From positions 186,001-250,000 of IMG/VR virus record IMGVR_UViG_3300022868_000009: a stretch of DNA of 64,000 nt, one strand, 5' to 3'. Numbering within the stretch: the stretch's first letter is position 1; each line of letters starts with the position of its first letter. The notes under the pieces are model-generated. The model searched no databases, had not been told where the DNA came from, and worked only from the letters and a program-made list of their open reading frames with translations. Shown in pieces: positions 5,051-59,922 of this stretch. The translations under genes and the position numbers were made by a program.

Positions 5051-5122
5051 TTAACAATATAAGAAGTTTCTGAATTCAAATCTTTTAAGATTGATGTCTG
5101 TGAATTGTTCAAAGGTTTTCAT
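5051..5122 (-). pseudogene. Micro-ORF or frameshifted remnant with capsid-targeting-like N-terminus (MKTFEQFTDINLKRFEFRNFLYC)
   Basis: Hand translation; ATG 3 nt after the stop of 5126..5497. Confidence 0.4.
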
Positions 5123-5125
5123 ATA

Positions 5126-5497
5126 TTATCCAGCTCTACCAGGTTTGTGAAGAGTAGTGAAACGTTTCCATTGACTTATGAAATCAGGTTTACTATTAGT
5201 TTTAGCTATTTCCGATTCTTTCTTGTTCTTTTCTCTTTCTCTTCTATTTCTCTCAATGGTTGATTTAGTATCAGATTTTTCTTTTTTATCAATTTTTTCA
5301 TCTTCTTCATCAAGTAAATCTATATCATCTTCATGAAGATCAACTACACCAGCATCACTAACTGTATCTTTACTAGGAGCACCAGTTTGACCTGCACCAA
5401 ACCAATTAGAATTACCATCTAATCTATTATTTGCAGTATTAGATTGATCTAATGGAACATTATGTTGCCATTCTAAATAAAATTTTAAATGTTTCAA
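5126..5497 (-). CDS. Putative internal virion protein (MKHLKFYLE tag)
   Basis: TTG start, TATATA motif at 5516-5525, tag motif. Confidence 0.6.
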   Translation of the reverse strand: MKHLKFYLEWQHNVPLDQSNTANNRLDGNSNWFGAGQTGAPSKDTVSDAGVVDLHEDDIDLLDEEDEKIDKKEKSDTKSTIERNRREREKNKKESEIAKTNSKPDFISQWKRFTTLHKPGRAG

Positions 5498-5560
5498 AAC
5501 TATTTTAATTTTAACTTATATATAAAAAACACACAAAGGAAATTTAAAAATTATTAATTT

Positions 5561-5785
5561 ATGAGTATATTTATTGTTACTTATTTAAGTAAATCAAAAA
5601 AACCTCAAACGAAAAAATTTACAACATCAGCTAATTCTAGTGATGATGCGTCTTTTAATTTTAGAAAATCTGGAATTAAATATTTAAAAGTTTTCAACAT
5701 TAAAGAATCAACATCAAACTGTTTAGGGAATATTTTTCCTGATTTACAAAATCTTAAAGATAAATTAGAAAATGAAGAAAATTAA
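5561..5785 (+). CDS. Hypothetical protein
   Basis: ORF overlapping next gene. Confidence 0.55.
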   Translation: MSIFIVTYLSKSKKPQTKKFTTSANSSDDASFNFRKSGIKYLKVFNIKESTSNCLGNIFPDLQNLKDKLENEEN

Positions 5786-6065
5786 AATCAATTTTACATT
5801 AATAATAGCAATATTAAACACATTTGCTTTTATAATTAATCCACTATCTATTATAGGTCTAGTAAATTTATTTTTTGCAATTTACTTCATAAGAAGCGTT
5901 TATAAACATTATAGGAAAAAATATGTGGAAAAAATTACTATTAAAAAGAAAAAAGAAGAAGAATTTGTGAAAAATTTTAGAAATTCAATAAAAAAACACA
6001 AAAAATTCGAAAAAGAATATGATTATATCAAAATTGATAAATCACCCGTTGAATTTAGAAATTAA
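5772..6065 (+). CDS. Small membrane protein
   Basis: Two N-terminal hydrophobic segments, basic tail. Confidence 0.55.
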   Translation: MKKIKINFTLIIAILNTFAFIINPLSIIGLVNLFFAIYFIRSVYKHYRKKYVEKITIKKKKEEEFVKNFRNSIKKHKKFEKEYDYIKIDKSPVEFRN

Positions 6066-6968
6066 TTTAGTAACTAATTTACTTCCTGAATTTGTCAAAC
6101 TAAATAACTTATTATCATTTTGATCTATTAATCCACGGTGATATAATTCAATTATATTATTAACTAATTCTTTAAAATCTAATTTATGTAAATATAAATC
6201 ATTTTTTAAAAATGATATTTTTCTAGGTTTAATATATAGTTTATATAATATTGCAAATTCTAATTTTGTCACCTTATTTGAACTATACACAAATCTTTCA
6301 TATAGAAATTCTACATGAAATTCTTCATTATTTCTAAATATTTTCATTATTAAATTGTCGAATTTATTTTTAATCTTATTAAAAATATCAGTTCCATAAT
6401 ATTTTAAACCAACTAAAGTAGCACCAACTCCAGTTAAGGTTACAGATTTTAAAAATTCTACTAAATTTATATCATTTATATTTACATCTACTAAAACACT
6501 AATAAAAGGTACTAATAAAATAGAATAAATAAATAAATCTCTTATTCCTTTTATAACTTTACCAAAATTACTAGCTAATATAGAAAATAATTTTTTTACA
6601 TTTTTTATAACATCAATAATCATTTTTAACAATTCATCTAAGCCTTTTTCATTAATAATTAATTTTGCTTTATGAATAGAATTTTTATTTTCTTTTAATA
6701 AAATTGCTAAAGCTGTTATTGTTAATAAAATAATATCAAAAACTCTTAATTCATATCCTGTATTCTTAATAATACTCTCAATAAAAGGGTAAAAAGCAGT
6801 AACGGATGTACCAAAAGTGGCTATGAAATAATAATTTAAACCTATTTCTTTAATTACATTTTTTTGTTCTTTTTGCCAAGTTGAAATTTCTCTTTTTTCA
6901 AATAATTTATACAGAATCTCACTTTCATTATCTTCATTATAACTTTTATAAGAATTAATATGTTTCAT
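6042..6968 (-). CDS. Multi-pass membrane protein with virion-tag N-terminus (MKHINSYKSYNE)
   Basis: About 4 hydrophobic helices; TAATATATAG just upstream. Confidence 0.65.
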   Translation of the reverse strand: MKHINSYKSYNEDNESEILYKLFEKREISTWQKEQKNVIKEIGLNYYFIATFGTSVTAFYPFIESIIKNTGYELRVFDIILLTITALAILLKENKNSIHKAKLIINEKGLDELLKMIIDVIKNVKKLFSILASNFGKVIKGIRDLFIYSILLVPFISVLVDVNINDINLVEFLKSVTLTGVGATLVGLKYYGTDIFNKIKNKFDNLIMKIFRNNEEFHVEFLYERFVYSSNKVTKLEFAILYKLYIKPRKISFLKNDLYLHKLDFKELVNNIIELYHRGLIDQNDNKLFSLTNSGSKLVTKLISKFNG

Positions 6969-7076
6969 AATATCTATATATTATTTTTTTATTTATAAAA
7001 AATTTTCTATATTGAATTAGGAAAATAAAGAAAAAAGGAAAAATTCAACCTTATTTAAATTTAAAAATATAATTAG

Positions 7077-7931: not shown

Positions 7932-8072
7932 AGAATTTTTGAAAAAATTTGTATTATTTTCAACTTTTAAATATATTTATAATATATAATAGAATGTTTT
8001 TTAACAAAAAAGAATTATAAAAAATATCATTAATTTTGTTATTGGCATTGTAACTAAAAAACAAAAAGTTTT

Positions 8073-8669: not shown

Positions 8670-8678
8670 CCCAATATT

Positions 8679-8706
8679 AAAGAGCCTTGTTTTTACAAGG
8701 CTCTTT
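8679..8706 (+). terminator. Intrinsic terminator
   Basis: AAAGAGCCTTGT-TTTT-ACAAGGCTCTTT perfect 12-bp stem after sigma gene. Confidence 0.85.
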
Positions 8707-8738
8707 CTACTTAAACTTATTAATAAAATTAACATATA

Positions 8739-8948
8739 ATGAGTAATATTTCGAAAGAAAATAAAAAATTAGCTAAAAACTGGTTTATAAAAAACATTGA
8801 TAAATATAATCTATCAACTTGGGATGATGAAGATGATTCATACAAATTATTTGAAGATCTACATAAAGATACAAGCATTAATTATGAAGATAAATTATAT
8901 TATAGAGAAGTTTTTACATTAGCCATGAAAATAAAAGATGAAATATAG
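8739..8948 (+). CDS. Hypothetical protein
   Basis: ORF in overlapping gene run. Confidence 0.55.
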   Translation: MSNISKENKKLAKNWFIKNIDKYNLSTWDDEDDSYKLFEDLHKDTSINYEDKLYYREVFTLAMKIKDEI

Positions 8949-9614: not shown

Positions 9615-9692
9615 AGAAAAATGATTTGGAATTGATTTTTTTTAACAAAAAAATTTAGTATTTTAGTAATAGGTAAAAAAAAAGAATGATAT

Positions 9693-23671: not shown

Positions 23672-24121
23672 TTAATTGTATTTCGTTCTTCGATTTACTT
23701 TTTGAGTTATTTCAAAAAGTAAATCAAGAATATAATTGTCACATTCTTCATTTTTCGTTTCTTCTATTGGAACTGGATTTTCGAAATTTGGATTTTTTTC
23801 CGCTCTTTTTTGATCATCTCTAAACCATTGATCTTCATTAATATAATATTCAAATCTCAAACCATTATCTAAAATAATAATTATCATATCATTTTTACTT
23901 TCACTAGAATCAGATGAATTACTAAGTCTAACATCTTTAATTTTACCACCAGGTAAAGTTTGTAAAACTTTCCCAATATATTCACTAAAATCTAGATCAG
24001 ATCTATTATTTCTTTGAAATTCTGATTTCCAGTCATCAAATTCATGTCTATCATCTTGATTTAAAGAACCATAAATATCTTTAAGTTTATTAAAATTCTC
24101 GAATTTTTTTAAGTATTTCAT
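23672..24121 (-). CDS. Putative internal virion protein (MKYLKKFENF tag)
   Basis: Tag plus late motif. Confidence 0.65.
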   Translation of the reverse strand: MKYLKKFENFNKLKDIYGSLNQDDRHEFDDWKSEFQRNNRSDLDFSEYIGKVLQTLPGGKIKDVRLSNSSDSSESKNDMIIIILDNGLRFEYYINEDQWFRDDQKRAEKNPNFENPVPIEETKNEECDNYILDLLFEITQKVNRRTKYN

Positions 24122-24468
24122 AATCGTTTTTTTTTTTTGTGGTTATTGATATTATATATATTATTAAGTTGAAATATTTTTAGAGAAATTTTTTACAAAT
24201 GGTATATAAATTTCTCTATAAGGTGACTCATTTTTAATTTGAGGGTGTTTATTAACTAGTTTTTTTAACCTATTTAATTGTTCATCTATATCATCTATTT
24301 TAGTAATATCATCTAACATTTCTTCTAAATCTTTTATTTCTAATTTATAAAGACCAAGTTGATCGCTTACTGATTTCCAATCTTTATCATTATTGAATGT
24401 ATCATTCCATTCGTTGAATTTTCTTAAGTATTTCATAATCTTTTTTTTGGGTTATTGATATTATATAT
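24101..24468 (-). repeat. Duplicated ~55-bp promoter/leader/tag cassette (24101-24159 and 24416-24468)
   Basis: TATATAATATCAATAACC..A-run..GATTATGAAATACTTA(A/G)AAAATTC on minus strand in both copies. Confidence 0.85.
24164..24436 (-). CDS. Putative internal virion protein (MKYLRKFNE tag)
   Basis: Tag plus late motif. Confidence 0.65.
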   Translation of the reverse strand: MKYLRKFNEWNDTFNNDKDWKSVSDQLGLYKLEIKDLEEMLDDITKIDDIDEQLNRLKKLVNKHPQIKNESPYREIYIPFVKNFSKNIST

Positions 24469-24503: not shown

Positions 24504-24908
24504 TTAAAATAATTCTTTTTCTAATTCTTTCATACATTGAATAACACCAAATTTGGTACCTTCCAATATAAAATCATATAAAGAAAATATATTATTACTC
24601 TTTGGTGAATCATCAAACCAATTATTATCATTACAAATATCATCAACATCACTTTGATATTTCAAATAAAAATTAAAAATATCTCCATTCTCAACAAAAT
24701 CTTGTAATTTACCTGGTTCTGGGTCATTAATGTAATCTCTGATAAAATTTTGAACATTAACCAATTCAGTTGTATTATCAACTGAATTATCTAATAAATC
24801 TAATACTCCTCTCTTTAAAGAAATATATTGTTCGGTTAGTTTATCTTTAAGAGTATCTTCAAGATTCTCTTTTATCATTTTTGAATATTCTTCTGTAAAT
24901 TTTTTCAT
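24504..24908 (-). CDS. Putative virion protein (MKKFTE tag)
   Basis: TAATATATAG immediately upstream. Confidence 0.6.
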   Translation of the reverse strand: MKKFTEEYSKMIKENLEDTLKDKLTEQYISLKRGVLDLLDNSVDNTTELVNVQNFIRDYINDPEPGKLQDFVENGDIFNFYLKYQSDVDDICNDNNWFDDSPKSNNIFSLYDFILEGTKFGVIQCMKELEKELF

Positions 24909-42158: not shown

Positions 42159-42172
42159 AATCAGGATTTTCT
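42143..42172. terminator. Bidirectional terminator between convergent genes
   Basis: AGAAAATCCTGA-TTAAAA-TCAGGATTTTCT perfect 12-bp inverted repeat. Confidence 0.75.
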
Positions 42173-43609
42173 ATTTTGTAATTCCGTTAATTTAAAATAA
42201 AAATCTCGAGCTATTTTCTTTAAGTAATATGTACCCATTCCTTGCATGCCTGTTTTCTCGTTATCTGGATCTGGTACTCTTTTACCATTTAAGTAGTTTA
42301 AACCACTAACATTTGTAATAAATTTATGACCCCCTGAATTTGATTGAATAATATCCCATGCCGTAACATACATATCATTTAATATCTTTTTATCATTTTC
42401 ACTTAATTTTATAAAAGGAACAGTCATCACAGCATCTAACACATTTTCAGATTGCTGATCTAAACCAACAATTTGATCTTTAAATAAAGAAACTAAATCT
42501 TTAAATCTAAAACCAAATTCATTTGAAATATCTTTTGGAGCTTTATTTCTTGTACCTTTAGCAGCTCTGACCATATCTTGTTCAGATATTCTCTTAATAT
42601 TTTTAACAGTTATTTTAACGTTTTGTAAATTAGTTTTGAAATTATTTAATACATCTTGTGCAATATCGCCCAAGTTAATATGTTCAAATTTTGGATCTTT
42701 CTTTTTAAAAGGATTTGTTGAAACTTGAACTAATCCCATTGGCCAAGCCATAATAAAAAAATTAGCATCTGGATATAATTTAAATGAAGCATATCTATCA
42801 TATGAACCAGTATCAAACATTCTAGGACCACCATATTGCATCATTATATCATTCTTAACAACTAATTTTTTAAAATTTTTAAGATTGTCAAAATATGTAT
42901 TTGCATGTTTTTCAATTGATTCAGCAGGATCTAAACCTAAATCTTTAGCTAATTTCTTAATTTCTAAAAACATACTAACTAAACTAGGTTTTGAATTTTC
43001 AACTAAACCTACTAAAAAACCAGGTTTATTTTTATAAGCCAATAATAGTTTATTTACAACAAATCCTAATTTCATTCTATTTGATTTAGTTGATATATCT
43101 TTATTGGTTTTATAGAAAAATTGAATTACATCAGAAGGAGTTATATCTTGACTTGCATAATCTGCACTATCAACAGTATCAATCATATTAACATCTTCTG
43201 CTGAAAATATATCATTAGGTGAAATTTCACCGGAAATAGTACCAGCATTTGATTTAGCTTTCTTAAAATGTGCAGACATAGTTTCTACGCCTATTTGCAT
43301 ATCATGGTGGTCTGTATGAATAACAAATTCTGTTTTACCGTGAGCAAAATCTACTAAAACAGCTAATGTACCGGGTTGTGGTTTATCTAAATGATATTCC
43401 ATACCACCATATTGAATAGTATGATATCTTACTGTTTTAATACCATATTGTTTCAAATATTCTCTCATAGCAATAGCTGATGTAACACCATCTAAATCTA
43501 CATGAAAATATATTTCAGCTTCATCAAAAGTTTTAGATATTTTTTTAATATCACGTATGCCAGATTCATTTAATTTCAGAAACTGATTATAACTTTCTAA
43601 TAAACGCAT
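42161..43609 (-). CDS. DHH-family phosphoesterase with virion-tag N-terminus
   Basis: HVDLDG, VDF, TDHH, SGGH; start revised to MRLLESYNQFLKLNE. Confidence 0.8.
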   Translation of the reverse strand: MRLLESYNQFLKLNESGIRDIKKISKTFDEAEIYFHVDLDGVTSAIAMREYLKQYGIKTVRYHTIQYGGMEYHLDKPQPGTLAVLVDFAHGKTEFVIHTDHHDMQIGVETMSAHFKKAKSNAGTISGEISPNDIFSAEDVNMIDTVDSADYASQDITPSDVIQFFYKTNKDISTKSNRMKLGFVVNKLLLAYKNKPGFLVGLVENSKPSLVSMFLEIKKLAKDLGLDPAESIEKHANTYFDNLKNFKKLVVKNDIMMQYGGPRMFDTGSYDRYASFKLYPDANFFIMAWPMGLVQVSTNPFKKKDPKFEHINLGDIAQDVLNNFKTNLQNVKITVKNIKRISEQDMVRAAKGTRNKAPKDISNEFGFRFKDLVSLFKDQIVGLDQQSENVLDAVMTVPFIKLSENDKKILNDMYVTAWDIIQSNSGGHKFITNVSGLNYLNGKRVPDPDNEKTGMQGMGTYYLKKIARDFYFKLTELQNRKS

Positions 43610-43613
43610 GAAA

Positions 43614-44171
43614 TTAAACATTTTTTAACAGATTCATTAAATCATCATTTAATATCTGTAACACTTTTTTACCATTTAGTTCAATTTGTGGGACATTCTT
43701 AATTATAGAAAAAACATCATTGCCCTCAACAACTATTTCACTAAATAATTTATCAAGTTGTGGATTTCTTCTATAATAAGAAACTAAATTATCAACAAAC
43801 TCTTTTAATTTTAATTCATGATTTTCATTATATTTCAAAACTAATAAAGATTTATCAGTTTGCTCTATTATCATGAAATGTAAATCATCTTTAGAATGAT
43901 TATTTGATTCTAAAAGAGAATAAGCATCAGAAGGTTTATAATTATCTAAAAATTTAGCGACTTTGCCATTAAGTTTAAACCTAGGTTTTTTCCTACTAAC
44001 ATTTGGATCTCTGTTATCTCTTCTTGGAGGTTTAGATAACTCTTGAGCCATTGCAGCCAAATTAGCCTTCTTAATCGGAATTTCCTTTGGAATTTCAGGA
44101 ACAGAACTAGTAATAGTTTTTGAACTACCACCACCTGTTGATGCAAAATCACTATATTTTTTTAAGCCCAT
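43614..44171 (-). CDS. Putative virion protein (MGLKKYSDF)
   Basis: Late operon, tag-like N-terminus. Confidence 0.6.
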   Translation of the reverse strand: MGLKKYSDFASTGGGSSKTITSSVPEIPKEIPIKKANLAAMAQELSKPPRRDNRDPNVSRKKPRFKLNGKVAKFLDNYKPSDAYSLLESNNHSKDDLHFMIIEQTDKSLLVLKYNENHELKLKEFVDNLVSYYRRNPQLDKLFSEIVVEGNDVFSIIKNVPQIELNGKKVLQILNDDLMNLLKNV

Positions 44172-44181: not shown

Positions 44182-44703
44182 TTAAATTTCTTGACTACCT
44201 TGTTGTAACTGTTGACCTTGTTGTTGTAATTTCTGGCCTTGTTGTTGTAATTGCTGCCCTTGTGTTTGTAGATTTTGACCTTGTGCTTGTAAACCATCAT
44301 CCTGTGCAGGAATATCCTGTGCAGTTTGTTGAGCTTGAGTTTCATCTGGAACATCTTGTAATGGTTGAACTTGTTGCGTTTGAGCTTGTTGCATTTGAGG
44401 TTGAACTTGTGCACCTTTTGCATAATTAGAACCCATTGCCATTGTAACAGGCAAATTCTCAATGTTCATATATGATGAAGCGATATAGTTAACAATCATT
44501 TCAGCCATTTGTTCTGCACCATAAAGATCTTTAACATCTCTACCTGTCTCATCTTTAACTTTTTTAGTAAAAGCGTTAATTAATGATTTAGGTACATCAA
44601 CGTTTGGTAATACTCTATAAACATCATCAATAGCAAATACAGTTTCTTGAACTTTATTTCCTTTTGAATTTTTAAAATCATTTAGATTTGTTAAATGTTT
44701 CAT
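44182..44703 (-). CDS. Putative virion protein with Q-rich tail (MKHLTNLNDF)
   Basis: TTAATATATA upstream; QGQ heptad repeats. Confidence 0.7.
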   Translation of the reverse strand: MKHLTNLNDFKNSKGNKVQETVFAIDDVYRVLPNVDVPKSLINAFTKKVKDETGRDVKDLYGAEQMAEMIVNYIASSYMNIENLPVTMAMGSNYAKGAQVQPQMQQAQTQQVQPLQDVPDETQAQQTAQDIPAQDDGLQAQGQNLQTQGQQLQQQGQKLQQQGQQLQQGSQEI

Positions 44704-48991: not shown

Positions 48992-49966
48992 ATGAAAATA
49001 TATAAATTTAATTCTTTTATATTTGAAAAAAGTTCTCTAACTTCAATTGGAATACCAAATGAAGTTCTTAAACAAATTCAAATAGATTACGAATTACCAC
49101 ATAATATAAAATGGGAAGAACTTACATTTTCAAACACCATCAAATCATCACTAGAAAATGATGACAAAAATCTATATATTGAAATAAATAAAGAAGGCAC
49201 TAAAGTAAACGTAATAACATCAATAAGAAAAAATAAAAAGAAAATCTACATATTAGACGAATATAAATATAATTTCGGATGGGAAAAATCAGAAAGAATT
49301 GATATAACATTCGCACCAATTGTACAAAAAATGTCATTTAAAAGTATATATTATCACTGTGAATCTAAAAACTTTAAACTCACATCCAAAAAAGAAAGAT
49401 CACTTGAAAATATAAATGTCCAATATGAAAATTTTAATACACAATTTAAAAAAGACTTTACTAACAAATTCATAAGTATAATTAAAAAAGATAAATATAA
49501 TCTACTAGACAATACTATAAAAGAAAACGGTCTAACAACATTTGATGAATATTTATATGATTTTGAATCACAATGTTCAGAAGAATTAAAAAGATATTTA
49601 ACAATTAAAGAACTTATTTCTAGATATGGTAAAGATAAAATATTTAGATCATTTATGTATTTCATTAAAACAAATAACTTAAAATTATTTGAATCAAATA
49701 CTTCATTAAAACAAACAATAAGTTTATTCGTTGACGATTATTGGTATGCAATGGACGAATTAGAAGGAGTATTACATGACTTAGGATATAAAAGAATGAG
49801 TGATAGTGGTAAAGATGTTCTTTTTGTAGAAAAAGAAGGCGAAACTAGATTATATTGGTACGGAAAAGCTTTTGAAATTAAAAATGAACCACATTATAAA
49901 ATGCCAGAAGACTGGGCAACTTTTGTTAAAGAAATAACACAAAATTTTGAAGATATAAAAATATGA
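48992..49966 (+). CDS. Putative virion protein (MKIYKFNSFIFE tag; internal LKLFES)
   Basis: Start revised; TTAATATATAG a few nt upstream. Confidence 0.65.
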   Translation: MKIYKFNSFIFEKSSLTSIGIPNEVLKQIQIDYELPHNIKWEELTFSNTIKSSLENDDKNLYIEINKEGTKVNVITSIRKNKKKIYILDEYKYNFGWEKSERIDITFAPIVQKMSFKSIYYHCESKNFKLTSKKERSLENINVQYENFNTQFKKDFTNKFISIIKKDKYNLLDNTIKENGLTTFDEYLYDFESQCSEELKRYLTIKELISRYGKDKIFRSFMYFIKTNNLKLFESNTSLKQTISLFVDDYWYAMDELEGVLHDLGYKRMSDSGKDVLFVEKEGETRLYWYGKAFEIKNEPHYKMPEDWATFVKEITQNFEDIKI

Positions 49967-50175
49967 AACATATAAAAACTTTTGAACAACATGCTGCAGA
50001 TTATTATGAAGGAGAAACTTCATCTTCACCTTCAGGACCAGTTAAAATGAACTGTCCTAATTGTGGTAATGAAATGAATGTAATGTTCCATGAAATTAGT
50101 CCAAAACCAATCACTTGTGAATTTTGTGGTGATAAAATAGAATATCCATATGGTCAAAGTTGGCGTTGGGCATAA
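49963..50175 (+). CDS. Zinc-ribbon protein with virion tag (MKHIKTFE)
   Basis: CPNC...CEFC. Confidence 0.7.
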   Translation: MKHIKTFEQHAADYYEGETSSSPSGPVKMNCPNCGNEMNVMFHEISPKPITCEFCGDKIEYPYGQSWRWA

Positions 50176-50176: not shown

Positions 50177-50662
50177 ATGAAACATTTAAAAACATATAAT
50201 GAAAAATTTTCTTTTAGGAAAGATGATCAAAGAGAAATTAGAAAATGGCTTTTTAATTATATATGTAATGAATATTTTGGCGAAAAACAAGAATCATTAA
50301 AAAAATATGATAGAAAAATTCGTTTTTCACCAGGTTCTAATGGTAACGATATATATAAAATATATAAAATATTTAATGATAATAGATATAGATTTGACAT
50401 TATATGTGAACTAACAGACGAAGAAATTAAAGATGATATCTATCTCAGTGCAAGTATTGTAAAATTCAAAGATATGTATGATATCTCACTTAGACAGACA
50501 TACAATGAAACAGAAAAACAAATAGAAATTAAAGGTATTGCTTTTGAAGTAAGAGCAATATTAAAAAAGGGAATGGACAAATCAAAATTTAAATCTGAAT
50601 TATCTGATAAATTAAGAGAAACTGTTGAACATGAATTCAGCATTATGACTCATTATTTATGA
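50177..50662 (+). CDS. Putative virion protein (MKHLKTYNE tag)
   Basis: Start revised to ATG 50177. Confidence 0.65.
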   Translation: MKHLKTYNEKFSFRKDDQREIRKWLFNYICNEYFGEKQESLKKYDRKIRFSPGSNGNDIYKIYKIFNDNRYRFDIICELTDEEIKDDIYLSASIVKFKDMYDISLRQTYNETEKQIEIKGIAFEVRAILKKGMDKSKFKSELSDKLRETVEHEFSIMTHYL

Positions 50663-52621: not shown

Positions 52622-52912
52622 ATGGCAAAAATAAATACAGAATATATTCATTTTATACTAGAACAGTTTGAAAAAACATTTGAAGAAAAACTTTATGATG
52701 TATATGTAGGACATAAAAAAACCAGTGATGATGACAAGGATGTCAAAATCTATACTGCAAAACCAGAAGAATGGGAACAAGTCATTGATACATTATTAGA
52801 AAAAGGTGTAAATCTAGAAGAATATGAACTATGTTCAAAAATACAAGGATTAAAACCTAAAGTATTGGAAGAAGCAAAGAAAAGACTTGAACAAAAAGAA
52901 AATATAGATTAA
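52622..52912 (+). CDS. Hypothetical protein with UVR-like motif
   Basis: LEEYELCSKIQ. Confidence 0.55.
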   Translation: MAKINTEYIHFILEQFEKTFEEKLYDVYVGHKKTSDDDKDVKIYTAKPEEWEQVIDTLLEKGVNLEEYELCSKIQGLKPKVLEEAKKRLEQKENID

Positions 52913-53566
52913 TTATCTACTTAATAAACCTATTTTAGAATAAACATTTTTCCAATCATCCTCATTGTTTATTATATATTCAGGTTCTCTGGAATCTAAA
53001 ATAGTTTCAGCATTTTCAATTGTTACATAATCAACGGCTTTTATTTTAATTCCATCATTAATTCTAACTCTATAAGTTTTAAATGTTTCACTCAAAATTT
53101 GTGCTATATATAAAGGAAAAGTACCATCATCAATATACATAACAGCAGAAAGTTTTGCATTTGGCATCTCAACGTACAACTTATTCTCTGTATCTATCAA
53201 ATGATATTTGGATAAGCTTTCTTTAATTCCGTTATGTTTAATAACATCACTATTCTTAACATAATAATAAGAATCTGTAGAAGTTTCTTTAAAAACTAAT
53301 GATGCATCAATTTTTTTACAGAATTGATTTAACATTTTTCTTTGAAAATTGCCTTTATCTAATAAATTACTATTAATTAATCCACTAAACTTATATTTAT
53401 CTTCTAATATAACAACAATTTTTCTATTTGCATTATCATAATACAAACAATCTATATCCAACATATAATTAGATCTAGATAAACTTCTATGTCCTTCAGA
53501 AAAGACATTACTTTTACCCCATTTTCTTTTATAATCTTCAAATATGTTTTTAATTCTTTGTATCAT
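52913..53566 (-). CDS. Hypothetical protein, possible PD-(D/E)XK fold
   Basis: DID...ILEDK; overlaps the 3' end of the CCA gene. Confidence 0.5.
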   Translation of the reverse strand: MIQRIKNIFEDYKRKWGKSNVFSEGHRSLSRSNYMLDIDCLYYDNANRKIVVILEDKYKFSGLINSNLLDKGNFQRKMLNQFCKKIDASLVFKETSTDSYYYVKNSDVIKHNGIKESLSKYHLIDTENKLYVEMPNAKLSAVMYIDDGTFPLYIAQILSETFKTYRVRINDGIKIKAVDYVTIENAETILDSREPEYIINNEDDWKNVYSKIGLLSR

Positions 53567-54857
53567 TACTCATATATTCATTTTTAAATCTTTCGTATTC
53601 TATTCTTCTCATTTCTTCACCTAAAGCCTTTCCATGAAATCCCTTTTGCATTAACTCTTGTGAATTTTTTAAAAAACCATCACTACAATATTTAATGAAA
53701 GCTTCAGTTATATTTGAATATAATCCCTGAGACTTAGTATATAATCTTAATATATTATCATCAATACCAAATCTAGTCTTATTTTTAGCTAACTGATAAA
53801 TATTTGTCATCCACATATCACCTGTAGATTCTTCTATTATCTTTTTCTCATAATTAAATAGAAAAATAATATAATCAATCAAATTATTTTGCAACTTACA
53901 ATCAATTAATTTGTTGGTTAAATTCGAATCATCTGAACTTGGAGTCATCAAAATAGGTAAAATTATCCTATTATCGAAAAGTGAAAAATTCACCCAAGGA
54001 ACCTCTATTTTAATTCCAGGGAAAATCTCATCAAACATATCAAATTCATCAAGTAATCTTAAATATTTAATAAACATAGACATATCATTTGCATCTCTCG
54101 CATGACCTAACATTTTATTCCATTCACCATTTTTAGTGTCAAATATTCTTTCAAATGAAACATCATCTTTCTCAGATATTCCATGTAATCTATGATCCAT
54201 AGTTAATGCATTCTTTACATTTTCACTTATTTTACCATTAGTTCTTGCACAAAATCTAAACAATCTTAATATTCTCAATCTATCTTCATTAAACCTTTCA
54301 TAAGGTTCACCAACAGTTTTAATAAGTCCTTTCTTTAAATCTTCAATACCACCAACATAATCAATGATTTTCTTACTACCAAGATCATAAAACATTGCAT
54401 TAATTGTTAAATCTCTTCTTAAAACATCATCTTGTATTGTAACATTTGAACCAATTTCTACTTTTTGATCATCACCTTTAACATCTCTACCTTTAGCAAT
54501 ATCTTTTCTATAGGTTGCTAATTCATGACCTAATGGTTCTAAATCTGTATAAATTCTTAATACTCCAAAATTTTGTCCTTGCTCTTCTTCAGAAACATAA
54601 CCACCATTCCAATCTTCTAATATCTCTTTAGATTCATCTGGCATTGCATCTGTAACTAAATCAAAATCTTTAGGTTTTTTTCCTTGTAAATAATCTCTAG
54701 GAGCGCCACCTACAACATATAATTCCTTACCATACTTTTTAAATCTTTCATATATTTCTACAATATCTTCGGGTATGAACATATCTTTAGCTTTAACAGT
54801 TTTCTTTTGCATTTTATTTTCATTTAAAAATTCAGAATATTTATACAATTTATTCAT
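53550..54857 (-). CDS. cca: tRNA nucleotidyltransferase (CCA-adding, class II) with virion-tag N-terminus
   Basis: VGGAPRD, DFDLVT, RRDLTINA, EDRLRILR; MNKLYKYSEFLNE; TTAATATATA upstream. Confidence 0.9.
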   Translation of the reverse strand: MNKLYKYSEFLNENKMQKKTVKAKDMFIPEDIVEIYERFKKYGKELYVVGGAPRDYLQGKKPKDFDLVTDAMPDESKEILEDWNGGYVSEEEQGQNFGVLRIYTDLEPLGHELATYRKDIAKGRDVKGDDQKVEIGSNVTIQDDVLRRDLTINAMFYDLGSKKIIDYVGGIEDLKKGLIKTVGEPYERFNEDRLRILRLFRFCARTNGKISENVKNALTMDHRLHGISEKDDVSFERIFDTKNGEWNKMLGHARDANDMSMFIKYLRLLDEFDMFDEIFPGIKIEVPWVNFSLFDNRIILPILMTPSSDDSNLTNKLIDCKLQNNLIDYIIFLFNYEKKIIEESTGDMWMTNIYQLAKNKTRFGIDDNILRLYTKSQGLYSNITEAFIKYCSDGFLKNSQELMQKGFHGKALGEEMRRIEYERFKNEYMSNDTKN

Positions 54858-55874: not shown

Positions 55875-56108
55875 ATGAAATATTTAAAGACATACGAAGA
55901 ATTAACCGATTCACAAAAAGAATCTGAATATAATAAAAAATTAGAAGAACTAGAAGATAAAAAAGAAAGACTTCAGAAAAAACTCCAATATTCAGAAGAT
56001 GTAAGAGATCCAGAAAAAACAGAACAAATAAGAAAAGAAAAGAAAGAAGAAATTGAAAAGAATAAAAAGAAAAAGAGTTCTGAAGATCAAAACTCTTTTG
56101 TATCCTAA
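55875..56108 (+). CDS. Putative internal virion protein (MKYLKTYEE tag)
   Basis: TTAATATATA upstream; charged coiled coil. Confidence 0.65.
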   Translation: MKYLKTYEELTDSQKESEYNKKLEELEDKKERLQKKLQYSEDVRDPEKTEQIRKEKKEEIEKNKKKKSSEDQNSFVS

Positions 56109-56810: not shown

Positions 56811-57962
56811 TTAATTAGGAAAGTCTAAATAAATCTTTCTATCGTCCCGTATAACAGAAATCACTTTAACTTTCACCTCTTTTCCCACTTCCAACTTTTT
56901 ATCAGCCTTCTGTATATAAGTGTTCTGAATTAACCCTGTTGTCTCTGGATCCAATTCTACTAAAACACCAAATGACTTGATAGATTTAACCTTGCCATCT
57001 TTAATTTGTCCAACTTTAATCTTATCCCACAAAGATTCTCTCAAAAATTGAGATAAAATAATCTTATTACCTTTCAAAATATCTCTAACATAGAATGTTA
57101 CTTCCATACCAGGTTGAACTTGATCAATCTTCCATTCAGGATTAAGATTGACTTTATGTATCATACCAGTTAAACATTCATTAAACTGAACAAATACACC
57201 GTAAGCCATTGTGCCTGTTACTGTTCCTTTATAAGCAATTGTTTTCTTAAGTTTACTAATTTCTACTGGAATTAGAGTTTTAAGATATTTCTTGCGTGAA
57301 ACAACATATACACCTTTCTCTTGTTGTAAAGATTCTAATAACACATTAATTCTACTACCAACTAAATTACTAGATTGTTCATCTGTTAATTTATTAATTC
57401 CAGCCAAAATATTTGGCATAAAAGATTTAATAGTTATATTATCCAACTCAATATCCAACATGAAACCTGCTGGTATTCTTTCAATAACTTTTACAACTAA
57501 CTGACGATTTTCTTTATAATAATCTTTCAATTTGTGCGAAACCTTCGCTTTAATAAGATCTGTTATTGAACCTTTAATTTGAAACGGATTATCTATCACC
57601 TTTATTATCATAACATCAATTTCATCACCAACCTTCAAATTTTGAATAATTTTAAAATCAGATAACTTATTCTCAACATAAATACTATCTTTATAATTTA
57701 TATTAATCTTAAGTTCCCTTTTAGAAATCGTTTCAATTTGACCAGTAACAATGTCACCTATTTTCACCTCATTATATGAAGATTCATTTTCAGACATCAT
57801 ATCTAACATCTCTTTATACTTATCATTAAAAGCTGATGTATCCATATCATCAGTCCACTTGATAATTTTATTATCTTCTTTCTCTAATTCATTCCAAAAC
57901 GCATCATCATCAATAATCGATGTATAATCTAAATTTTCTGGATTTTCTGAATTTTCTTTCAT
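56811..57962 (-). CDS. rpsA: Ribosomal protein bS1 homolog (about 4 S1 domains)
   Basis: GDIVTGQI; VVSRKKYL; GTVTGTMAYGVFV...GMIH; GKVKSIKSFGVLVEL...GLI. Confidence 0.82.
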   Translation of the reverse strand: MKENSENPENLDYTSIIDDDAFWNELEKEDNKIIKWTDDMDTSAFNDKYKEMLDMMSENESSYNEVKIGDIVTGQIETISKRELKININYKDSIYVENKLSDFKIIQNLKVGDEIDVMIIKVIDNPFQIKGSITDLIKAKVSHKLKDYYKENRQLVVKVIERIPAGFMLDIELDNITIKSFMPNILAGINKLTDEQSSNLVGSRINVLLESLQQEKGVYVVSRKKYLKTLIPVEISKLKKTIAYKGTVTGTMAYGVFVQFNECLTGMIHKVNLNPEWKIDQVQPGMEVTFYVRDILKGNKIILSQFLRESLWDKIKVGQIKDGKVKSIKSFGVLVELDPETTGLIQNTYIQKADKKLEVGKEVKVKVISVIRDDRKIYLDFPN

Positions 57963-58017
57963 AAATTAATTTTTTTGGTTAAACTTCTTTTATCTTTACA
58001 TATACTTAAACAATAAA

Positions 58018-58046
58018 AAAAAGTTGTTAAAAAAATTAACAACTTT
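58018..58046. terminator. Perfect inverted repeat overlapping the S1 promoter
   Basis: AAAAGTTGTTAA-AAAAA-TTAACAACTTTT. Confidence 0.6.
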
Positions 58047-58068
58047 TCTTAATTATATTAAAAATGTT

Positions 58069-58464
58069 TCAATAACTAATTTCTAGTTTTTGTAAATAAT
58101 TATTTAATACTGATGCCCTTTCATAATCTTCAATTTCTAAATAATATTTCATTTTTTTGATAAGATCCTGTTCGCTGTCATTATATGAAAAAACGTTATT
58201 TTTTGTAATGTCTACAACATATTTCTTTCTTTTTTTGTTGTAAGTAACATCATAGTCTTTTAATTTTTGTCTGACATCTTCTATCGTATAATTATAGTCA
58301 GAATTTTCATCAAGTTTATTTAAACTCTCCGATTCTATCAACATTAACATAAACTCTTCTGAGAATGCCTTTTTCTCACATAAAAAATCACACAGAATTT
58401 CAGGATCTGTGCCAATAATCTTTAATAGTGAGTTGAAATTTTCCTTAAATCTTCTTGTAGCCAT
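58069..58464 (-). CDS. Hypothetical protein with UVR-like C-terminus
   Basis: EIEDYERASVL. Confidence 0.6.
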   Translation of the reverse strand: MATRRFKENFNSLLKIIGTDPEILCDFLCEKKAFSEEFMLMLIESESLNKLDENSDYNYTIEDVRQKLKDYDVTYNKKRKKYVVDITKNNVFSYNDSEQDLIKKMKYYLEIEDYERASVLNNYLQKLEISY

Positions 58465-58511
58465 GATAATATGGTTATTTTCTGCCCAATAAGAAACTTA
58501 TTAGGCAAATA

Positions 58512-58808
58512 TTAATCATCAAATTGTGTGTACTCATTAGGTTGATTCAATAAACCTAAACTTTTGTAAATACACACTTTATTATTATCAATATAATATT
58601 TATCATAAGACGTAAAATTACATAAACTTATAAAAGATTCAAACCAAACCTCTTTTCCTGTAATAATATCATTTAATTCAATTGTTATCATCTGATTTTC
58701 TTCAATTAAATTAATATCAATGTCAAGATCTTCAAAAAAATTATATAAATTTGATTTCAATGAAACATACTGTGTTTCATTTATAAATTGATTAAATTTT
58801 GTTTTCAT
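58512..58808 (-). CDS. Putative virion protein (MKTKFNQFINE tag)
   Basis: Tag; coupled to upstream genes. Confidence 0.6.
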   Translation of the reverse strand: MKTKFNQFINETQYVSLKSNLYNFFEDLDIDINLIEENQMITIELNDIITGKEVWFESFISLCNFTSYDKYYIDNNKVCIYKSLGLLNQPNEYTQFDD

Positions 58809-59500
58809 TATCTAAATGTTTTATAAAATTTACCTAAATTGTTCTTCTTATATATTAATTCTTTTTCTCTTCTATCTAATTCTTCTAAAAATTCTTCATC
58901 ATTAGAAACACCAAAATCTTTATAATGTTTCTCTCTAGAAGGCGCGGATGTCGTATAACTACCGTAAGTCGCAATTGAGTCTGGTTTTGTAGTTTCAGGT
59001 AAATTTCTTTTTATAATTAACCCAGCCATTCTATTATCAATTTGATTAATTATTGGATCTTTTAAATGTTTAACAATTTTCTTATTATTTTTAGTTTCTG
59101 GATAAAATGCAATAAATTCATCAAAAACGCCAATATCAAAAAGTCTACTTTTATTACTAGATTTAGTACTCGTTATTCCTTCACTATATTCATAATCTGC
59201 AATTAAAGGAAATATATCATTAATATCTTTTGATTTTGAATTCATAAAATCATATAGAGGTTGTATGGCTTTTTTATAAGCTTTTTGATTTTCTTCTTCT
59301 ATACCAACTTTATTTCTTTCATACCAATTCGTACTCAAAGATCTCCATTTATCCTTGATCTTATCATATCCTTGATAAGTACTATAATCTTTTTTAAGTT
59401 TTTGAAGACTTTTTAATACAACATCATCATCAACAATATTTTCAATTTCTTCCAATCTAATTTCAAGATCTTCAAGATCATTACTACAATATATTTTCAT
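58808..59500 (-). CDS. Hypothetical protein
   Basis: Coupled ORF. Confidence 0.6.
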   Translation of the reverse strand: MKIYCSNDLEDLEIRLEEIENIVDDDVVLKSLQKLKKDYSTYQGYDKIKDKWRSLSTNWYERNKVGIEEENQKAYKKAIQPLYDFMNSKSKDINDIFPLIADYEYSEGITSTKSSNKSRLFDIGVFDEFIAFYPETKNNKKIVKHLKDPIINQIDNRMAGLIIKRNLPETTKPDSIATYGSYTTSAPSREKHYKDFGVSNDEEFLEELDRREKELIYKKNNLGKFYKTFR

Positions 59501-59922
59501 TAAAATAAACCTAATTTATTTGATTCAGTTGAATATTTGTATTGTGGATATTTATCCAAAAACTCATCTAATTCAAAATTGTTTTTTGTTTTAGTTTTTT
59601 GTAAAATTTCATTAAGACTATCTTCAACACTAACACCTAAAACTTCGAAATCTTTGTAGATACCAGTTGATAGTTTATTCTTATATTCAGAATTAGGATT
59701 ATAAGATATATAACCTTTATTTTCAGAAGGTTTAAAATTCTTTTTATCATTAACAAAATCTAACCATTCTATATTAAATTTTTCATCACCATTATAAATA
59801 TCACAAAAAATAGTGTAAATAATTTTCAATTTATCAGGTTTAATATTATATAATGTTAAATCGTTCCCTGTATAATCAAGATTAATGTTTTCAAACATTT
59901 TATATAAAACTAAATATTTCAT
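59500..59922 (-). CDS. Putative virion protein (MKYLVLYKMFE tag)
   Basis: AAATATATA just upstream. Confidence 0.6.
   Translation of the reverse strand: MKYLVLYKMFENINLDYTGNDLTLYNIKPDKLKIIYTIFCDIYNGDEKFNIEWLDFVNDKKNFKPSENKGYISYNPNSEYKNKLSTGIYKDFEVLGVSVEDSLNEILQKTKTKNNFELDEFLDKYPQYKYSTESNKLGLF

What the first reader, a model, noticed from the sequence alone, without database searches (positions are those of the whole stretch)
5051..59922. Window-wide N-terminal 'capsid-targeting' tag on about 17 unrelated late proteins
Seen: otherwise unrelated ORFs begin with MK(H/Y)(L/I)xx(F/Y)xE-like peptides: MKTFEQF (5122), MKHLKFYLE (5497), MKHINSYKSYNE (6968), MKYLKKFENF (24121), MKYLRKFNE (24436), MKKFTE (24908), MRLLESYNQFLKLNE (43609), MGLKKYSDF (44171), MKHLTNLNDF (44703), MKIYKFNSFIFE (48992), MKHIKTFE (49963), MKHLKTYNE (50177), MIQRIKNIFE (53566), MNKLYKYSEFLNE (54857), MKYLKTYEE (55875), MKTKFNQFINE (58808), MKYLVLYKMFE (59922). 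Nearly all sit directly behind, or in an operon behind, the TATATA late motif. The tag is absent from the core replication enzymes. Known: T4 internal proteins carry a 10-aa capsid-targeting sequence (MKTYQEFIAE) that gp21 protease cleaves after Glu. Inference: this phage has a modular address label that loads a large, swappable protein cargo into the head for injection.
Basis: partly seen in the sequence, partly recalled or inferred. Interest (0 to 1): 0.85.

Follow-up and report, generated by a model that had tools for sequence, protein, structure and literature searches.

The report
Capsid-address tag on phage cargo proteins
About 13 unrelated late proteins in this huge-phage fragment begin with the same 9-13-residue peptide, which closely resembles the phage T4 tag that loads proteins into the head for injection, and related uncultured phages put it on dozens of proteins, including likely anti-defence enzymes.

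Summary
All 17 peptides are in the sequence. Nine match a tight class A tag, MK[HY][LI]K.[FY][EN]E. Four match a class B tag, M..KK[YF]..F[IL].E, which is the shape of the T4 capsid targeting sequence MKTYQEFIAE. One is a 23-codon ORF and three are not separable from chance. The tag is far above chance, is conserved at the amino-acid rather than the codon level, and sits on late-type transcription units. It is absent from the early and replication blocks.

It is also widespread. The DNA pattern gave more than 117 viral loci against 1 for a scrambled control, and 78 of 911 proteins carry a tag in the related 635-kb genome LR745206. Relatives have a T4-type head module: gp20 portal, gp23 capsid protein and a gp21-family (S77) protease fused to a long C-terminal extension. 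In the CCA-adding-enzyme family the tag is a detachable add-on ending in [IL]-x-Glu, the T4 gp21 cleavage consensus.

Tagged cargo in relatives includes an RNA ligase, an Acb1-like phosphoesterase fused to an exonuclease, a GH108 lysozyme and ankyrin and LRR proteins; the window itself has a tagged DHH protein.

The best reading is a greatly expanded T4-like capsid-targeting system. Packaging and cleavage are untested, and the window's own head genes were not seen.

The parts
5126..5497 (-). Class A tagged gene, 123 aa, TTG start, (M)KHLKFYLE; function unknown
   Evidence: PWM p=2.8e-4. ATATATA at 5517-5523, 26 nt upstream.
6042..6968 (-). Class A tagged gene, 308 aa, MKHINSYKSYNE; weak C-terminal winged-helix hit
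   Evidence: p=2.2e-4. ATATATA at 6975-6981, 13 nt upstream. Only 6 homologues found.
23672..24121 (-). Class A tagged gene, 149 aa, MKYLKKFENF; directly downstream of the baseplate operon
   Evidence: Best PWM score in the window, none of 17,848 null peptides reach it. Motif 38-40 nt upstream.
24164..24436 (-). Class A tagged gene, 90 aa, MKYLRKFNEW
   Evidence: p=2.2e-4. ATATATA at 24462-24468. Its upstream region resembles that of 24121.
44182..44703 (-). Diverged class A tagged gene, 173 aa, MKHLTNLNDF; first gene of the unit 44703 > 44171 > 43609
   Evidence: p=1e-3. The LR745206 orthologue starts MKHIRTYENY. The family shows variable tag-like N-termini. ATATATA at 44726-44732.
49963..50175 (+). 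Class A tagged gene, 70 aa, MKHIKTFEQ; zinc-ribbon-like; internal to an operon
   Evidence: no null peptide reaches its score. It overlaps the end of 48992-49966 and has no promoter of its own.
50177..50662 (+). Class A tagged gene, 161 aa, MKHLKTYNEK; internal to an operon
   Evidence: The identical gene is in IMG/VR locus L072.
55875..56108 (+). Class A tagged gene, 77 aa, MKYLKTYEEL
   Evidence: ATATATA at 55845-55851, 30 nt upstream.
59500..59922 (-). Class A tagged gene, 140 aa, MKYLVLYKMFEN; next to the tail tube gene
   Evidence: p=1.1e-4. ATATATA at 59928-59934, 12 nt upstream.
42161..43609 (-). Class-B-like tagged DHH-family phosphoesterase, 482 aa from the Met at 43609, MRLLESYNQFLKLNE
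   Evidence: Pfam DHH 1.1e-5, below the curated cut-off. The LR745206 orthologue (47% identity) starts MISKYNQFINE. PWM p=1.2e-3. It did not match the class B regex.
48992..49966 (+). Class B tagged gene, 324 aa, MKIYKFNSFIFE; terminator, then late motif, then ATG
   Evidence: Class B regex. ATATATA at 48980-48986. Terminator-like hairpin at 48936-48963.
53550..54857 (-). Class B tagged CCA-adding enzyme (tRNA nucleotidyltransferase), 435 aa, MNKLYKYSEFLNE
   Evidence: Pfam PolyA_pol 1.1e-29 from residue 46. Nearly all of the 120 best homologues start with the tag, and the few without it start at the tag boundary. AF2: residues 1-20 have pLDDT 45-66, the core 96. ATATATA at 54863-54869 after a terminator-like hairpin.
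58512..58808 (-). Class B tagged gene, 98 aa, MKTKFNQFINE (compare T4 MKTYQEFIAE)
   Evidence: The T4 sequences were read from NC_000866.
52622..52912 (+).
   Evidence: Matches the class B regex. ATATATA 28 nt upstream. Uncertain.
5051..5122 (-).
   Evidence: It is followed out of frame by the 45-aa ORF 4920-5057.
24504..24908 (-).
   Evidence: Not among the top PWM scores. The LR745206 orthologue starts MIKKYLQFIKE. ATATATA 12 nt upstream.
43614..44171 (-).
52913..53566 (-).

Best explanation
The peptide is a capsid targeting sequence of the T4 kind, used on a much larger scale.

Proposed mechanism:
1. Late in infection, genes behind the TAATATATA-type promoter are transcribed.
2. Products that begin with the 9-13-residue tag bind the scaffolding core of the assembling prohead through this short amphipathic helix. 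The tag is either class A, MK[HY][LI]K.[FY][EN]E, or class B, M..KK[YF]..F[IL].E.
3. In relatives the likely receptor is the long C-terminal extension of the gp21-type protease.
4. The shell closes around them, and the protease cuts after the Glu that ends the tag.
5. The mature cargo stays in the head and enters the next host cell with the DNA.

Shown here:
- The tag exists.
- It is selected at the amino-acid level.
- It is modular.
- It sits on late-type transcription units.
- It co-occurs with a T4-type head module in relatives.
- It ends in a hydrophobic-x-Glu motif at the boundary with the cargo.

Inferred only: binding to the core, cleavage, presence in virions and injection.
For: 1. Specificity. 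See the observation check.

2. Protein-level selection. In 72 tags that were not chosen by nucleotide pattern, synonymous codons track genome usage:
- Lys AAA 0.76 in tags, 0.74 in gene bodies
- Glu GAA 0.75 and 0.73
- Leu spread over TTA, CTA, CTT and TTG

3. Modularity.
- Tagged proteins in other phages include ankyrin, LRR, methyltransferase and HD domains.
- In the window they include a CCA-adding enzyme and a DHH protein.
- In LR745206 they include a T4 Rnl1-type RNA ligase, a 2H (Acb1-like) phosphoesterase fused to a DEDD exonuclease, a GH108 lysozyme and an Sa_NUDIX protein.
- In the CCA-enzyme family nearly all of 120 homologues carry MK.K.Y.QF[IL].E before the conserved NKIS.EIP.P. 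The few untagged ones start at that junction.
- In the NFACT-R gene beside the capsid gene, class A and class B/C tags alternate before the same KK.KFP core.
- The AF2 model leaves residues 1-20 outside the confident core.

4. T4-type machinery in relatives.
- Portal PF07230, 2.7e-57, and capsid protein PF07068, 1.8e-26.
- The protein upstream of the capsid gene aligns to T4 gp21: hhalign 88%, E=3e-6, and the best PDB hit is 5JBL. His in GEFDHP and Ser in VSSR are invariant.
- Tag-seeded loci carry these genes at 30-82% identity.

5. Likeness to T4. ipII and ipIII start MKTYQEFIAE and ipI starts MKTFKEF. The class B regex finds exactly ipII and ipIII among 68 T4 ORFs, and nothing in the pT24 or MaF61 pieces. 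T4-family and phiKZ-family prohead proteases all cut after Glu, and T4 internal proteins reach the core through the CTS (PMC5694885, PMC3012670).

6. Timing. See the observation check. In LR745206, 38 of 78 tagged genes have the motif against 191 of 833 untagged (p=3.6e-6). The RNA-ligase, phosphoesterase, GH108 and DHH genes of LR745206 have the late motif directly upstream. Late synthesis of repair and counter-defence enzymes is most easily explained if they are made for the next infection.
Against: - No virion proteome, cleavage assay or cultured member exists for this clade, so packaging is untested.
- The window's own portal, protease and capsid genes were not seen. They lie outside the window and three attempts to fetch them failed.
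- The scale is far beyond T4: about 9% of LR745206 proteins (78 of 911) against a handful in T4. Whether a head can take about 80 kinds of cargo is unknown.
- Class A has Phe or Tyr, not Leu or Ile, at the P3 position, and often Phe after the Glu. This departs from the T4 consensus.
- No clean tag-less orthologues were found for class A families.
- In the window the tagged genes sit beside tail and baseplate genes, not head genes.
- The proposed capsid-protein cleavage site (INE|N) rests on visual similarity only. A global alignment of the first 100 residues with T4 gp23 is not significant (z=1.7).
- The protease assignment is below Pfam's cut-off for a single sequence (16.8 bits against 27).
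Confidence: 0.55

Rival explanations
1. The tag is a protein-level address or handle for something other than the head interior. Candidates are loading into the tail lumen or baseplate, recognition by a phage chaperonin, timed degradation, or zymogen-like masking that the protease removes outside the capsid.
For: In the window the tagged genes lie next to baseplate, tube and sheath genes, not head genes. Class A does not fit the T4 [LI]-x-E rule exactly. About 80 kinds of cargo per genome is a lot for one head.
Against: Class B is nearly the T4 CTS, and the class B regex retrieves T4 ipII and ipIII. Classes A and B swap at the same junction in orthologues. The clade has the T4-type core machinery. 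No known tail-loading or chaperonin signal looks like this (my own knowledge).
Confidence: 0.25
2. The conserved start is an RNA-level or nascent-chain element that boosts or regulates translation of late, nearly leaderless mRNAs in a host without Shine-Dalgarno pairing. The peptide itself would have no function.
For: There is no Shine-Dalgarno sequence upstream. The late motif begins 11-12 nt before the ATG in 94 LR745206 genes, which implies leaderless or 5-nt-leader mRNAs. Codon bias within tags is mildly AT-rich: Phe TTT 0.90 against 0.68, His CAT 0.83 against 0.62.
Against: Synonymous codons otherwise follow genome usage, and Leu uses four codons. Tags occur on operon-internal genes and at both promoter spacings. 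The most strongly expressed late genes (capsid protein, portal, sheath) lack it. Conservation runs to residues 7-11, with Phe/Tyr and Glu. Orthologues gain or lose it at a fixed protein boundary.
Confidence: 0.1
3. The tagged genes are diverged paralogues of one ancestral gene, or share a DNA cassette (promoter plus first codons) that serves as a recombination site for gene shuffling. On this view the shared N-terminus is a relic, not a signal.
For: Tandem arrays of similar tagged genes exist, for example 24121 and 24436 with similar upstream DNA and seven tagged genes in locus L023. In T-even phages the conserved CTS flanks a hypervariable internal-protein locus (PMC3012670).
Against: The tag precedes unrelated known folds: CCA enzyme, RNA ligase, GH108, 2H plus DEDD, ankyrin and LRR. 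Mean column identity outside the tag is 7%. Nucleotide identity is not preserved. The distance from promoter to ATG varies.
Confidence: 0.07
4. The pattern is a by-product of 25% G+C composition (Lys, Asn, Ile, Phe, Tyr and Glu-rich proteins) and of the common Met-Lys start.
For: Lys is the commonest second residue overall (27 of 84). Loosely defined hydrophobic-x-Glu motifs are frequent by chance.
Against: 0 of 327 internal Met peptides match. PWM p values and shuffles argue against chance. The scrambled-pattern control gave 1 hit against more than 117. In LR745206, 54 matches were observed against 0.13 expected.
Confidence: 0.01

Closest known systems
Phage T4 capsid targeting sequence on internal proteins IPI, IPII, IPIII (and Alt), removed by the gp21 prohead protease
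   Same: An extreme N-terminal peptide of about 10 residues on otherwise unrelated, fast-evolving accessory proteins. Class B (for example MKTKFNQFINE, MISKYNQFINE) is nearly T4's MKTYQEFIAE and ends in [IL]-x-Glu. Relatives have a gp20 portal, a gp23 capsid protein and a gp21-family protease. Expression is late-type. T4 internal proteins are counter-defence proteins (PMC3012670), and some cargo here looks like counter-defence.
   Different: The scale is 13 or more in 64 kb and 78 of 911 proteins in LR745206, against a handful in T4. The dominant class A consensus, MK[HY]LK.[FY][EN]E, has an aromatic P3 residue. Cargo includes large enzymes of 300-660 aa. The protease is fused to a C-terminal extension of about 470 residues. 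The clade is only distantly related to T4: the T4 gp23 BLASTP hit to the LR745206 capsid protein is 21% identical over 242 aa (E=7e-6), and tblastn with that capsid protein reaches T4-like cyanophages at about 27% over about 40% of its length. Packaging is unproven.
Propeptide-processed head and ejection proteins of phiKZ-like giant phages (phiKZ gp175, SPN3US gp245 protease; motif A/S/G-x-Glu)
   Same: These are giant phages that load many proteins into the head and trim them after Glu with a gp21-related protease (PMC5694885).
   Different: There the propeptides are long and dissimilar, with no shared short address peptide. The P3 residue is small rather than hydrophobic. Far fewer proteins are processed: 8 of about 50 SPN3US head proteins (PMC5694885).
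Encapsulin cargo-loading peptides
   Same: A short terminal peptide is sufficient to address diverse enzymes to the interior of an HK97-fold shell (my own knowledge).
   Different: They are usually C-terminal, are not cleaved, involve no scaffold or protease, belong to a cellular compartment rather than a virion, and have an unrelated sequence.
Mobile promoter cassettes (PeSL) of T4-type phages
   Same: Repeated short regulatory modules at the start of many accessory genes, linked to gene shuffling (my own knowledge).
   Different: PeSLs are early promoters with stem-loops conserved as DNA and do not encode a shared peptide. Here the conservation is in amino acids.

Membership tests
T4-type capsid targeting sequence (CTS) system | A conserved peptide of about 10 residues at the extreme N-terminus of otherwise unrelated proteins | tested here: met
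   Sequences outside the tag share 7% mean column identity. Cargo folds are diverse.
T4-type capsid targeting sequence (CTS) system | Sequence of the T4 kind: Met-Lys start, aromatic residue, Phe, then [LI]-x-Glu (MKTYQEFIAE) | tested here: met
   Class B only. The regex built on this clade picks ipII and ipIII and nothing else in 50 kb of T4. Class A shares the Met-Lys start, the Phe/Tyr at position 7 and the terminal Glu, but has Phe/Tyr at P3.
T4-type capsid targeting sequence (CTS) system | The tag ends at a prohead-protease site (after Glu) at the boundary with the mature protein | tested here: inconclusive
   The sequence boundary fits. Untagged CCA-enzyme orthologues begin where the tag's Glu ends, and both tag classes abut the same core in the NFACT-R family. 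Actual cleavage cannot be tested here.
T4-type capsid targeting sequence (CTS) system | The genome encodes a gp21-family protease, a scaffolding core, a gp23-type capsid protein and a gp20 portal | tested here: inconclusive
   Met in relatives: LR745206 and more than 250 IMG/VR contigs. Not seen for the window's own genome, because the module lies outside the window and three attempts to fetch it failed. 41 of 87 window proteins have LR745206 homologues.
T4-type capsid targeting sequence (CTS) system | Synthesis at the time of head assembly (late) | tested here: met
   By promoter-motif inference only. The ATATATA motif is shared with the sheath, baseplate and tube operons, and 10 of 13 tagged genes carry it against 14 of 71 untagged. 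No transcript data.
T4-type capsid targeting sequence (CTS) system | Tagged proteins are found processed in virions and are injected | not testable with these tools
   There is no cultured member. The nearest cultured phages (Tenacibaculum PTm1 and pT24, Flavobacterium MaF61) are 24-29% identical in the capsid protein, and the pT24 and MaF61 pieces read have no tags.
Sec, Tat or lipoprotein signal peptide | A hydrophobic core of 10 or more residues after a basic N-region (with a lipobox Cys for lipoproteins) | tested here: not met
   The tag is 9-13 residues with Lys2, Lys5 and Glu8/9, followed by acidic or polar residues (logo).
Double-glycine bacteriocin leader (for example enterocin A, MKHLK...GG) | A leader of 15-25 residues ending in Gly-Gly | tested here: not met
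   This lead came from the only literature hits for MKHLK. No Gly is among the common residues at positions 10-14, and cargo proteins are 65-660 aa.
DNA-level mobile promoter or recombination cassette (PeSL-like) | Conservation at the nucleotide level, including synonymous sites, and fixed geometry with the promoter | tested here: not met
   Synonymous codon usage is near genome-wide values. The promoter-to-ATG distance varies, and some tagged genes have no promoter of their own.

The most novel reading that the evidence does not exclude
A whole clade of uncultured huge phages uses one short, exchangeable N-terminal address label to pre-load dozens of different proteins into the head and inject them with the DNA. 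The count reaches about 80 kinds in a 635-kb genome. The cargo includes tRNA-repair enzymes (RNA ligase, CCA-adding enzyme), Acb1-like, NUDIX and DHH enzymes that may degrade signalling nucleotides, a lysozyme and ankyrin or LRR effectors. The phage would then arrive with a ready-made counter-defence proteome. The T4 internal-protein system would be a small remnant or sibling of this strategy.
Probability: 0.45. Interest if true: 0.9.

Novelty: new variant of a known kind. Interest (0 to 1): 0.8.

Why it matters
If the tag is a capsid address, it gives a sequence-only way to read out the injected proteome of uncultured huge phages. That is the set of proteins that act before any phage gene is expressed. 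The list already contains candidates for early counter-defence: tRNA repair and Acb1-like phosphoesterases.

It would also show that the T4 capsid-targeting principle is ancient and scalable, reaching to nearly a tenth of a proteome.

It would offer a family of natural short tags for loading foreign proteins into phage heads.

It makes a long-standing question directly testable: what do giant phages carry in their heads, and why are their genomes full of small orphan genes? The test is virion or viral-fraction proteomics looking for peptides that start just after the tag's Glu.

Tried and rejected
- Megablast of 24 kb against GenBank phages found only one 72%-identical stretch in the ribonucleotide reductase (RNR) gene.
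- PHROGs and Pfam on the window's tagged proteins gave almost nothing. Function had to come from relatives.
- A gapless PWM missed class B. It was found only after comparing orthologues.
- Codon analysis on loci seeded by the DNA pattern is biased. It was redone on the unbiased LR745206 and capsid-gene loci.
- Homologue search for 6042-6968 gave 6 hits, too few for a model.
- The 44182-44703 family gave no clean tag boundary.
- A screen for tag-less orthologues of class A proteins used too loose a definition of "untagged". It showed only that homologues keep tag-like starts.
- Three attempts to reach the window's own head genes failed: a capsid-protein query, a protease query from a second subclade, and a 10-kb walk from the terminase.
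- Closest cultured relatives: the first 50 kb of Flavobacterium phage MaF61 and 50 kb of Tenacibaculum phage pT24 have no tags, so no published proteome helps.
- Literature searches for the motif strings and for capsid-targeting signals found no description of this tag.
- A global alignment of the capsid-protein propeptide with T4 gp23 is not significant, so the predicted capsid cleavage site is kept as a guess.
- Sigma-70-type promoter sites are not above shuffles.
- No tRNA genes are in the window.

Full report
**What the window is.** The window has 25% G+C, uses the standard genetic code (TAA ends 71 of 87 called genes) and is densely coded. It encodes:
- a tail sheath, a tail tube and a baseplate hub
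- a UvsX-type recombinase, a DnaB-type helicase and a class I ribonucleotide reductase
- a gp32-like single-strand-binding protein
- a CCA-adding enzyme, an S1-domain protein and a weak DHH-family protein

Its nearest database relatives are the uncultured huge phages LR745206 (634,780 bp) and LR756501-4. More distant are the Prevotella Lak phages and the Tenacibaculum, Flavobacterium, Chryseobacterium and Sphingomonas jumbo phages. Of 87 window proteins, 41 have homologues in LR745206 at a median of 38% identity. The identical CCA-enzyme sequence is on record on a 348,222-bp contig, and an identical tagged gene lies on IMGVR_UViG_3300022868_000009. The window is therefore a piece of a phage of about 345 kb.

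- MK[HY][LI] opens 8 of 84 called proteins, 0 of 327 peptides after an internal Met, and 10 of 993 ATG-started peptides in all six frames, most of which are the real gene starts.
- A weight matrix trained only on tags from other genomes lifts nine or ten window N-termini far above a null of 17,848 internal peptides. They are 24121, 55875, 50177, 49963, 59922, 6968, 24436, 5497, 44703 and 43609.
- Orthologue comparison then showed a second form. The DHH protein starts ...SYNQFLKLNE here and MISKYNQFINE in LR745206. The CCA enzyme starts MNKLYKYSEFLNE here and MILKKYKMFLES there.
- The pattern [YF]..F[ILMV].E within the first eight positions occurs 4 times in the window against 0.04 expected, and 18 times in LR745206 against about 1 expected.

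52622 is a possible extra. 5122 is a 23-codon ORF. 24908, 44171 and 53566 cannot be told from chance.

**How widespread is it?**
Nearly all are in contigs of 20-31% G+C, and nearly all sit at the first ATG of an ORF.
- The same codons in scrambled order hit once.
- The 596-Gb collection of cellular genomes gave 72 hits, scattered over many taxa.
- In those viral loci, 221 of 1,378 distinct ORFs start with the tag. The consensus runs on to Glu/Asn at position 8, Glu at 9 and Phe/Ser at 10, followed by acidic residues.
- In the complete LR745206 genome, which was not chosen by the pattern, 52 proteins carry class A by the N-terminal regex, or 54 by the looser positional count, against 0.13 expected. 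18 carry class B and 8 carry a related class C. Together that is 78 of 911.
- Of the tag-seeded loci, 89 of 116 share at least one protein with LR745206 or the window, so this is largely one broad clade.

**Peptide or nucleic acid?** In 72 distinct class A tags from LR745206 and from loci fetched through the capsid gene, synonymous codons follow gene-body usage:
- Lys AAA 0.76 in tags, 0.74 in gene bodies
- Glu GAA 0.75 and 0.73
- Tyr TAT 0.74 and 0.78
- Leu spread over four codons

There is only a mild A+T lean for Phe and His. Tags also occur on operon-internal genes without a promoter of their own (49963, 50177, 43609) and at both promoter spacings. Selection therefore acts on the amino acids.

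**Is it modular?** Outside the tag the proteins do not align; mean column identity is 7%.
- Known domains behind the tag in other phages include ankyrin repeats (three proteins), LRR, a methyltransferase and an HD domain.
- In the window they include the CCA-adding enzyme and the DHH protein.
- In LR745206 they include a T4 Rnl1-type RNA ligase (8e-21), a 2H phosphoesterase with a weak Acb1 match fused to a DEDD exonuclease, a GH108 lysozyme (3.6e-15) and an SMODS-associated NUDIX protein (4e-30).

The clearest case is the CCA enzyme. Nearly all of the 120 best homologues in a 5.8-billion-protein database begin MK.K.Y.QF[IL].E and continue NKIS.EIP.P.DI. The few that lack the tag begin at that junction. 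In the small NFACT-R gene next to the capsid gene, orthologues carry either MKYLKYFE or MIKKYNYFFE before the same SKK.KFP core. The two classes are therefore interchangeable at one boundary, which falls right after a Glu. An AlphaFold2 model of the window's CCA enzyme (mean pLDDT 88.7) leaves residues 1-20 at pLDDT 45-66 with a short helix at residues 7-13. The enzyme core starts at about residue 21 with pLDDT 96.

**Timing.** ATATATA, usually as TAATATATA, lies within 45 nt upstream of 23 of 87 window genes. These include the sheath gene, the first gene of the baseplate operon and the 726-aa gene that heads the tube operon. It is almost absent from the long plus-strand block 7077-23089 and from the replication block 32841-39395 (2 of 32 genes). 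Ten of 13 tagged genes have their own copy, against 14 of 71 untagged genes (p=1e-4). The other three follow a tagged gene that has one. No tag occurs in the 32 early and replication genes, against 13 of 52 elsewhere (p=0.0013). In LR745206 the figures are 38 of 78 against 191 of 833 (p=3.6e-6). Terminator-like hairpins stand directly before the motif of 48992 and 54857. The motif resembles the T4 late promoter TATAAATA (my own knowledge). "Late" is an inference from its company with structural genes.

**The head machinery.** The window has no head genes. In LR745206 the head module lies at 178-203 kb:
- a T4-type portal (PF07230, 2.7e-57)
- a gp23-family capsid protein (PF07068, 1.8e-26)
- directly upstream of the capsid gene, a 707-aa protein whose first 140 residues match Peptidase_S77 weakly

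A profile of 18 such proteins aligns to T4 gp21 with 88% probability (E=3e-6). Its best hit among all PDB sequences is 5JBL, the T4 prohead protease. The His of GEFDHP and the Ser of VSSR line up with the corresponding T4 gp21 motifs (GELNHP and VSSRG) and are invariant. I take these to be the catalytic pair on my own knowledge of gp21. IMG/VR has 223 contigs with a close relative of this capsid protein and 39 stretches (36 distinct loci) with the protease of a second subclade. Several of these are contigs that also gave tag hits. Tag-seeded loci carry portal, protease and capsid genes at 30-82% identity. The capsid protein has a strongly conserved N-terminal 45 residues ending ...[FY]H[SQ]INE-NAY, after which the sequence becomes variable. 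I read INE|N as the likely maturation site, but the alignment with the T4 propeptide is not significant. This point is a guess.

**Comparison with T4.** From the T4 record itself, ipII and ipIII begin MKTYQEFIAE, followed by Ala. ipI begins MKTFKEF and has ITE followed by Ala at residue 19. The class B regex, built on this clade, picks exactly ipII and ipIII among 68 ORFs of a 50-kb T4 stretch. It picks none in 45 ORFs of pT24 or 72 ORFs of MaF61. The literature states three relevant points:
- T4 internal proteins join the scaffolding core through the CTS.
- Prohead proteases of the T4 and phiKZ families all cut after Glu (PMC5694885).
- The T-even internal proteins are a diverse set of defence-countering proteins sharing only the CTS (PMC3012670).

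**Most likely mechanism.** The tag is a capsid targeting sequence. It docks late-made cargo on the prohead core and is clipped after its terminal Glu by the gp21-type protease. The cargo is then delivered with the DNA. The cargo list fits this reading. An RNA ligase plus a CCA-adding enzyme could mend tRNAs cut by host nucleases. Acb1-like, NUDIX and DHH enzymes could destroy signalling nucleotides. A lysozyme could help entry. Ankyrin and LRR proteins could bind host factors. In LR745206 the RNA-ligase, phosphoesterase, GH108 and DHH genes carry the late motif directly upstream. That makes most sense if the products are meant for the next cell. These functional readings are inference from family names.

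I put this explanation at 0.55. The main alternatives are:
- the same kind of protein-level tag but with another destination or partner (0.25)
- a translation element of leaderless late mRNAs (0.1)
- a relic of paralogy or a recombination cassette (0.07)
- composition alone (0.01)

**Limits.**
- No proteome or cultured member exists.
- The window's own head module was not retrieved.
- Class A departs from the T4 cleavage consensus at P3 and P1'.
- The number of tagged proteins is an order of magnitude above anything known.
- I found no description of this tag in the searchable literature. That library is incomplete.

**Verdict.** This is a real, statistically solid and widespread N-terminal tag. 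It is best filed as a greatly expanded variant of the T4 capsid-targeting system in an uncultured huge-phage clade, with function still to be shown.

Noticed in passing
window, upstream of e.g. 6968, 24908, 48992, 54857, 59922; LR745206 genome-wide: The ATATATA late-type motif sits at two sharp distances from the ATG. Its first base is at -11/-12 (94 genes in LR745206) or at about -27. The -12 class leaves only 5 nt before the start codon, so these late mRNAs would be leaderless or nearly so. No Shine-Dalgarno sequence is seen anywhere, which fits a Bacteroidota-type host.
   Followed up: partly
window 4920-5122 (-): A 23-codon ORF starting MKTFEQF (compare T4 ipI, MKTFKEF) begins 3 nt after the stop of gene 5126-5497. 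It is followed, out of frame, by a 45-aa ORF. This may be a decayed tagged gene.
   Followed up: no
LR745206 448257-449573 (-) and 470485-471747 (+): There are class B-tagged, late-promoter-driven genes for a 2H phosphoesterase (weak Acb1 match) fused to a DEDD exonuclease, and for a T4 Rnl1-type RNA ligase. Three tagged genes in a row surround the CCA enzyme (515857-518329).
   Followed up: partly
LR745206 198546-200669 (L206:8546-10666): The gp21-type protease domain is fused to a C-terminal extension of about 470 residues, presumably the scaffold. The protein starts MKPVLI[IV]EN...SLI[RK]E, with two hydrophobic-x-Glu motifs near its own N-terminus, as in T4 gp21 (MNEPQLLIE...).
   Followed up: partly
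L288 (ENA k141_204393, same phage as the window): This piece of the window's phage encodes a translation initiation factor IF3 homologue, a family B DNA polymerase interrupted by an intein, a NUDIX protein and a gp25-like baseplate protein beside the large terminase. It also has three more class A tagged genes.
   Followed up: no
window 48936-48963 (+) and 54878-54906 (-): Terminator-like hairpins lie immediately upstream of the late motif of two tagged genes. Each of these genes is therefore a self-contained cassette of terminator, promoter and tagged ORF.
   Followed up: no
L023, L001, L016, L117 (IMG/VR loci): Arrays of five to seven tagged genes occur in one locus. Some are paralogous, with strongly acidic stretches right after the tag (for example ...FEEIDFDENDFDWEEE).
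   Followed up: no
window 56811-57962 (-) and LR745206 195382-197286: RNA-metabolism genes are present: an S1-domain protein in the window, and an RNase II/R-type enzyme (RNB domain, 4e-112) inside the head module of LR745206.
   Followed up: no
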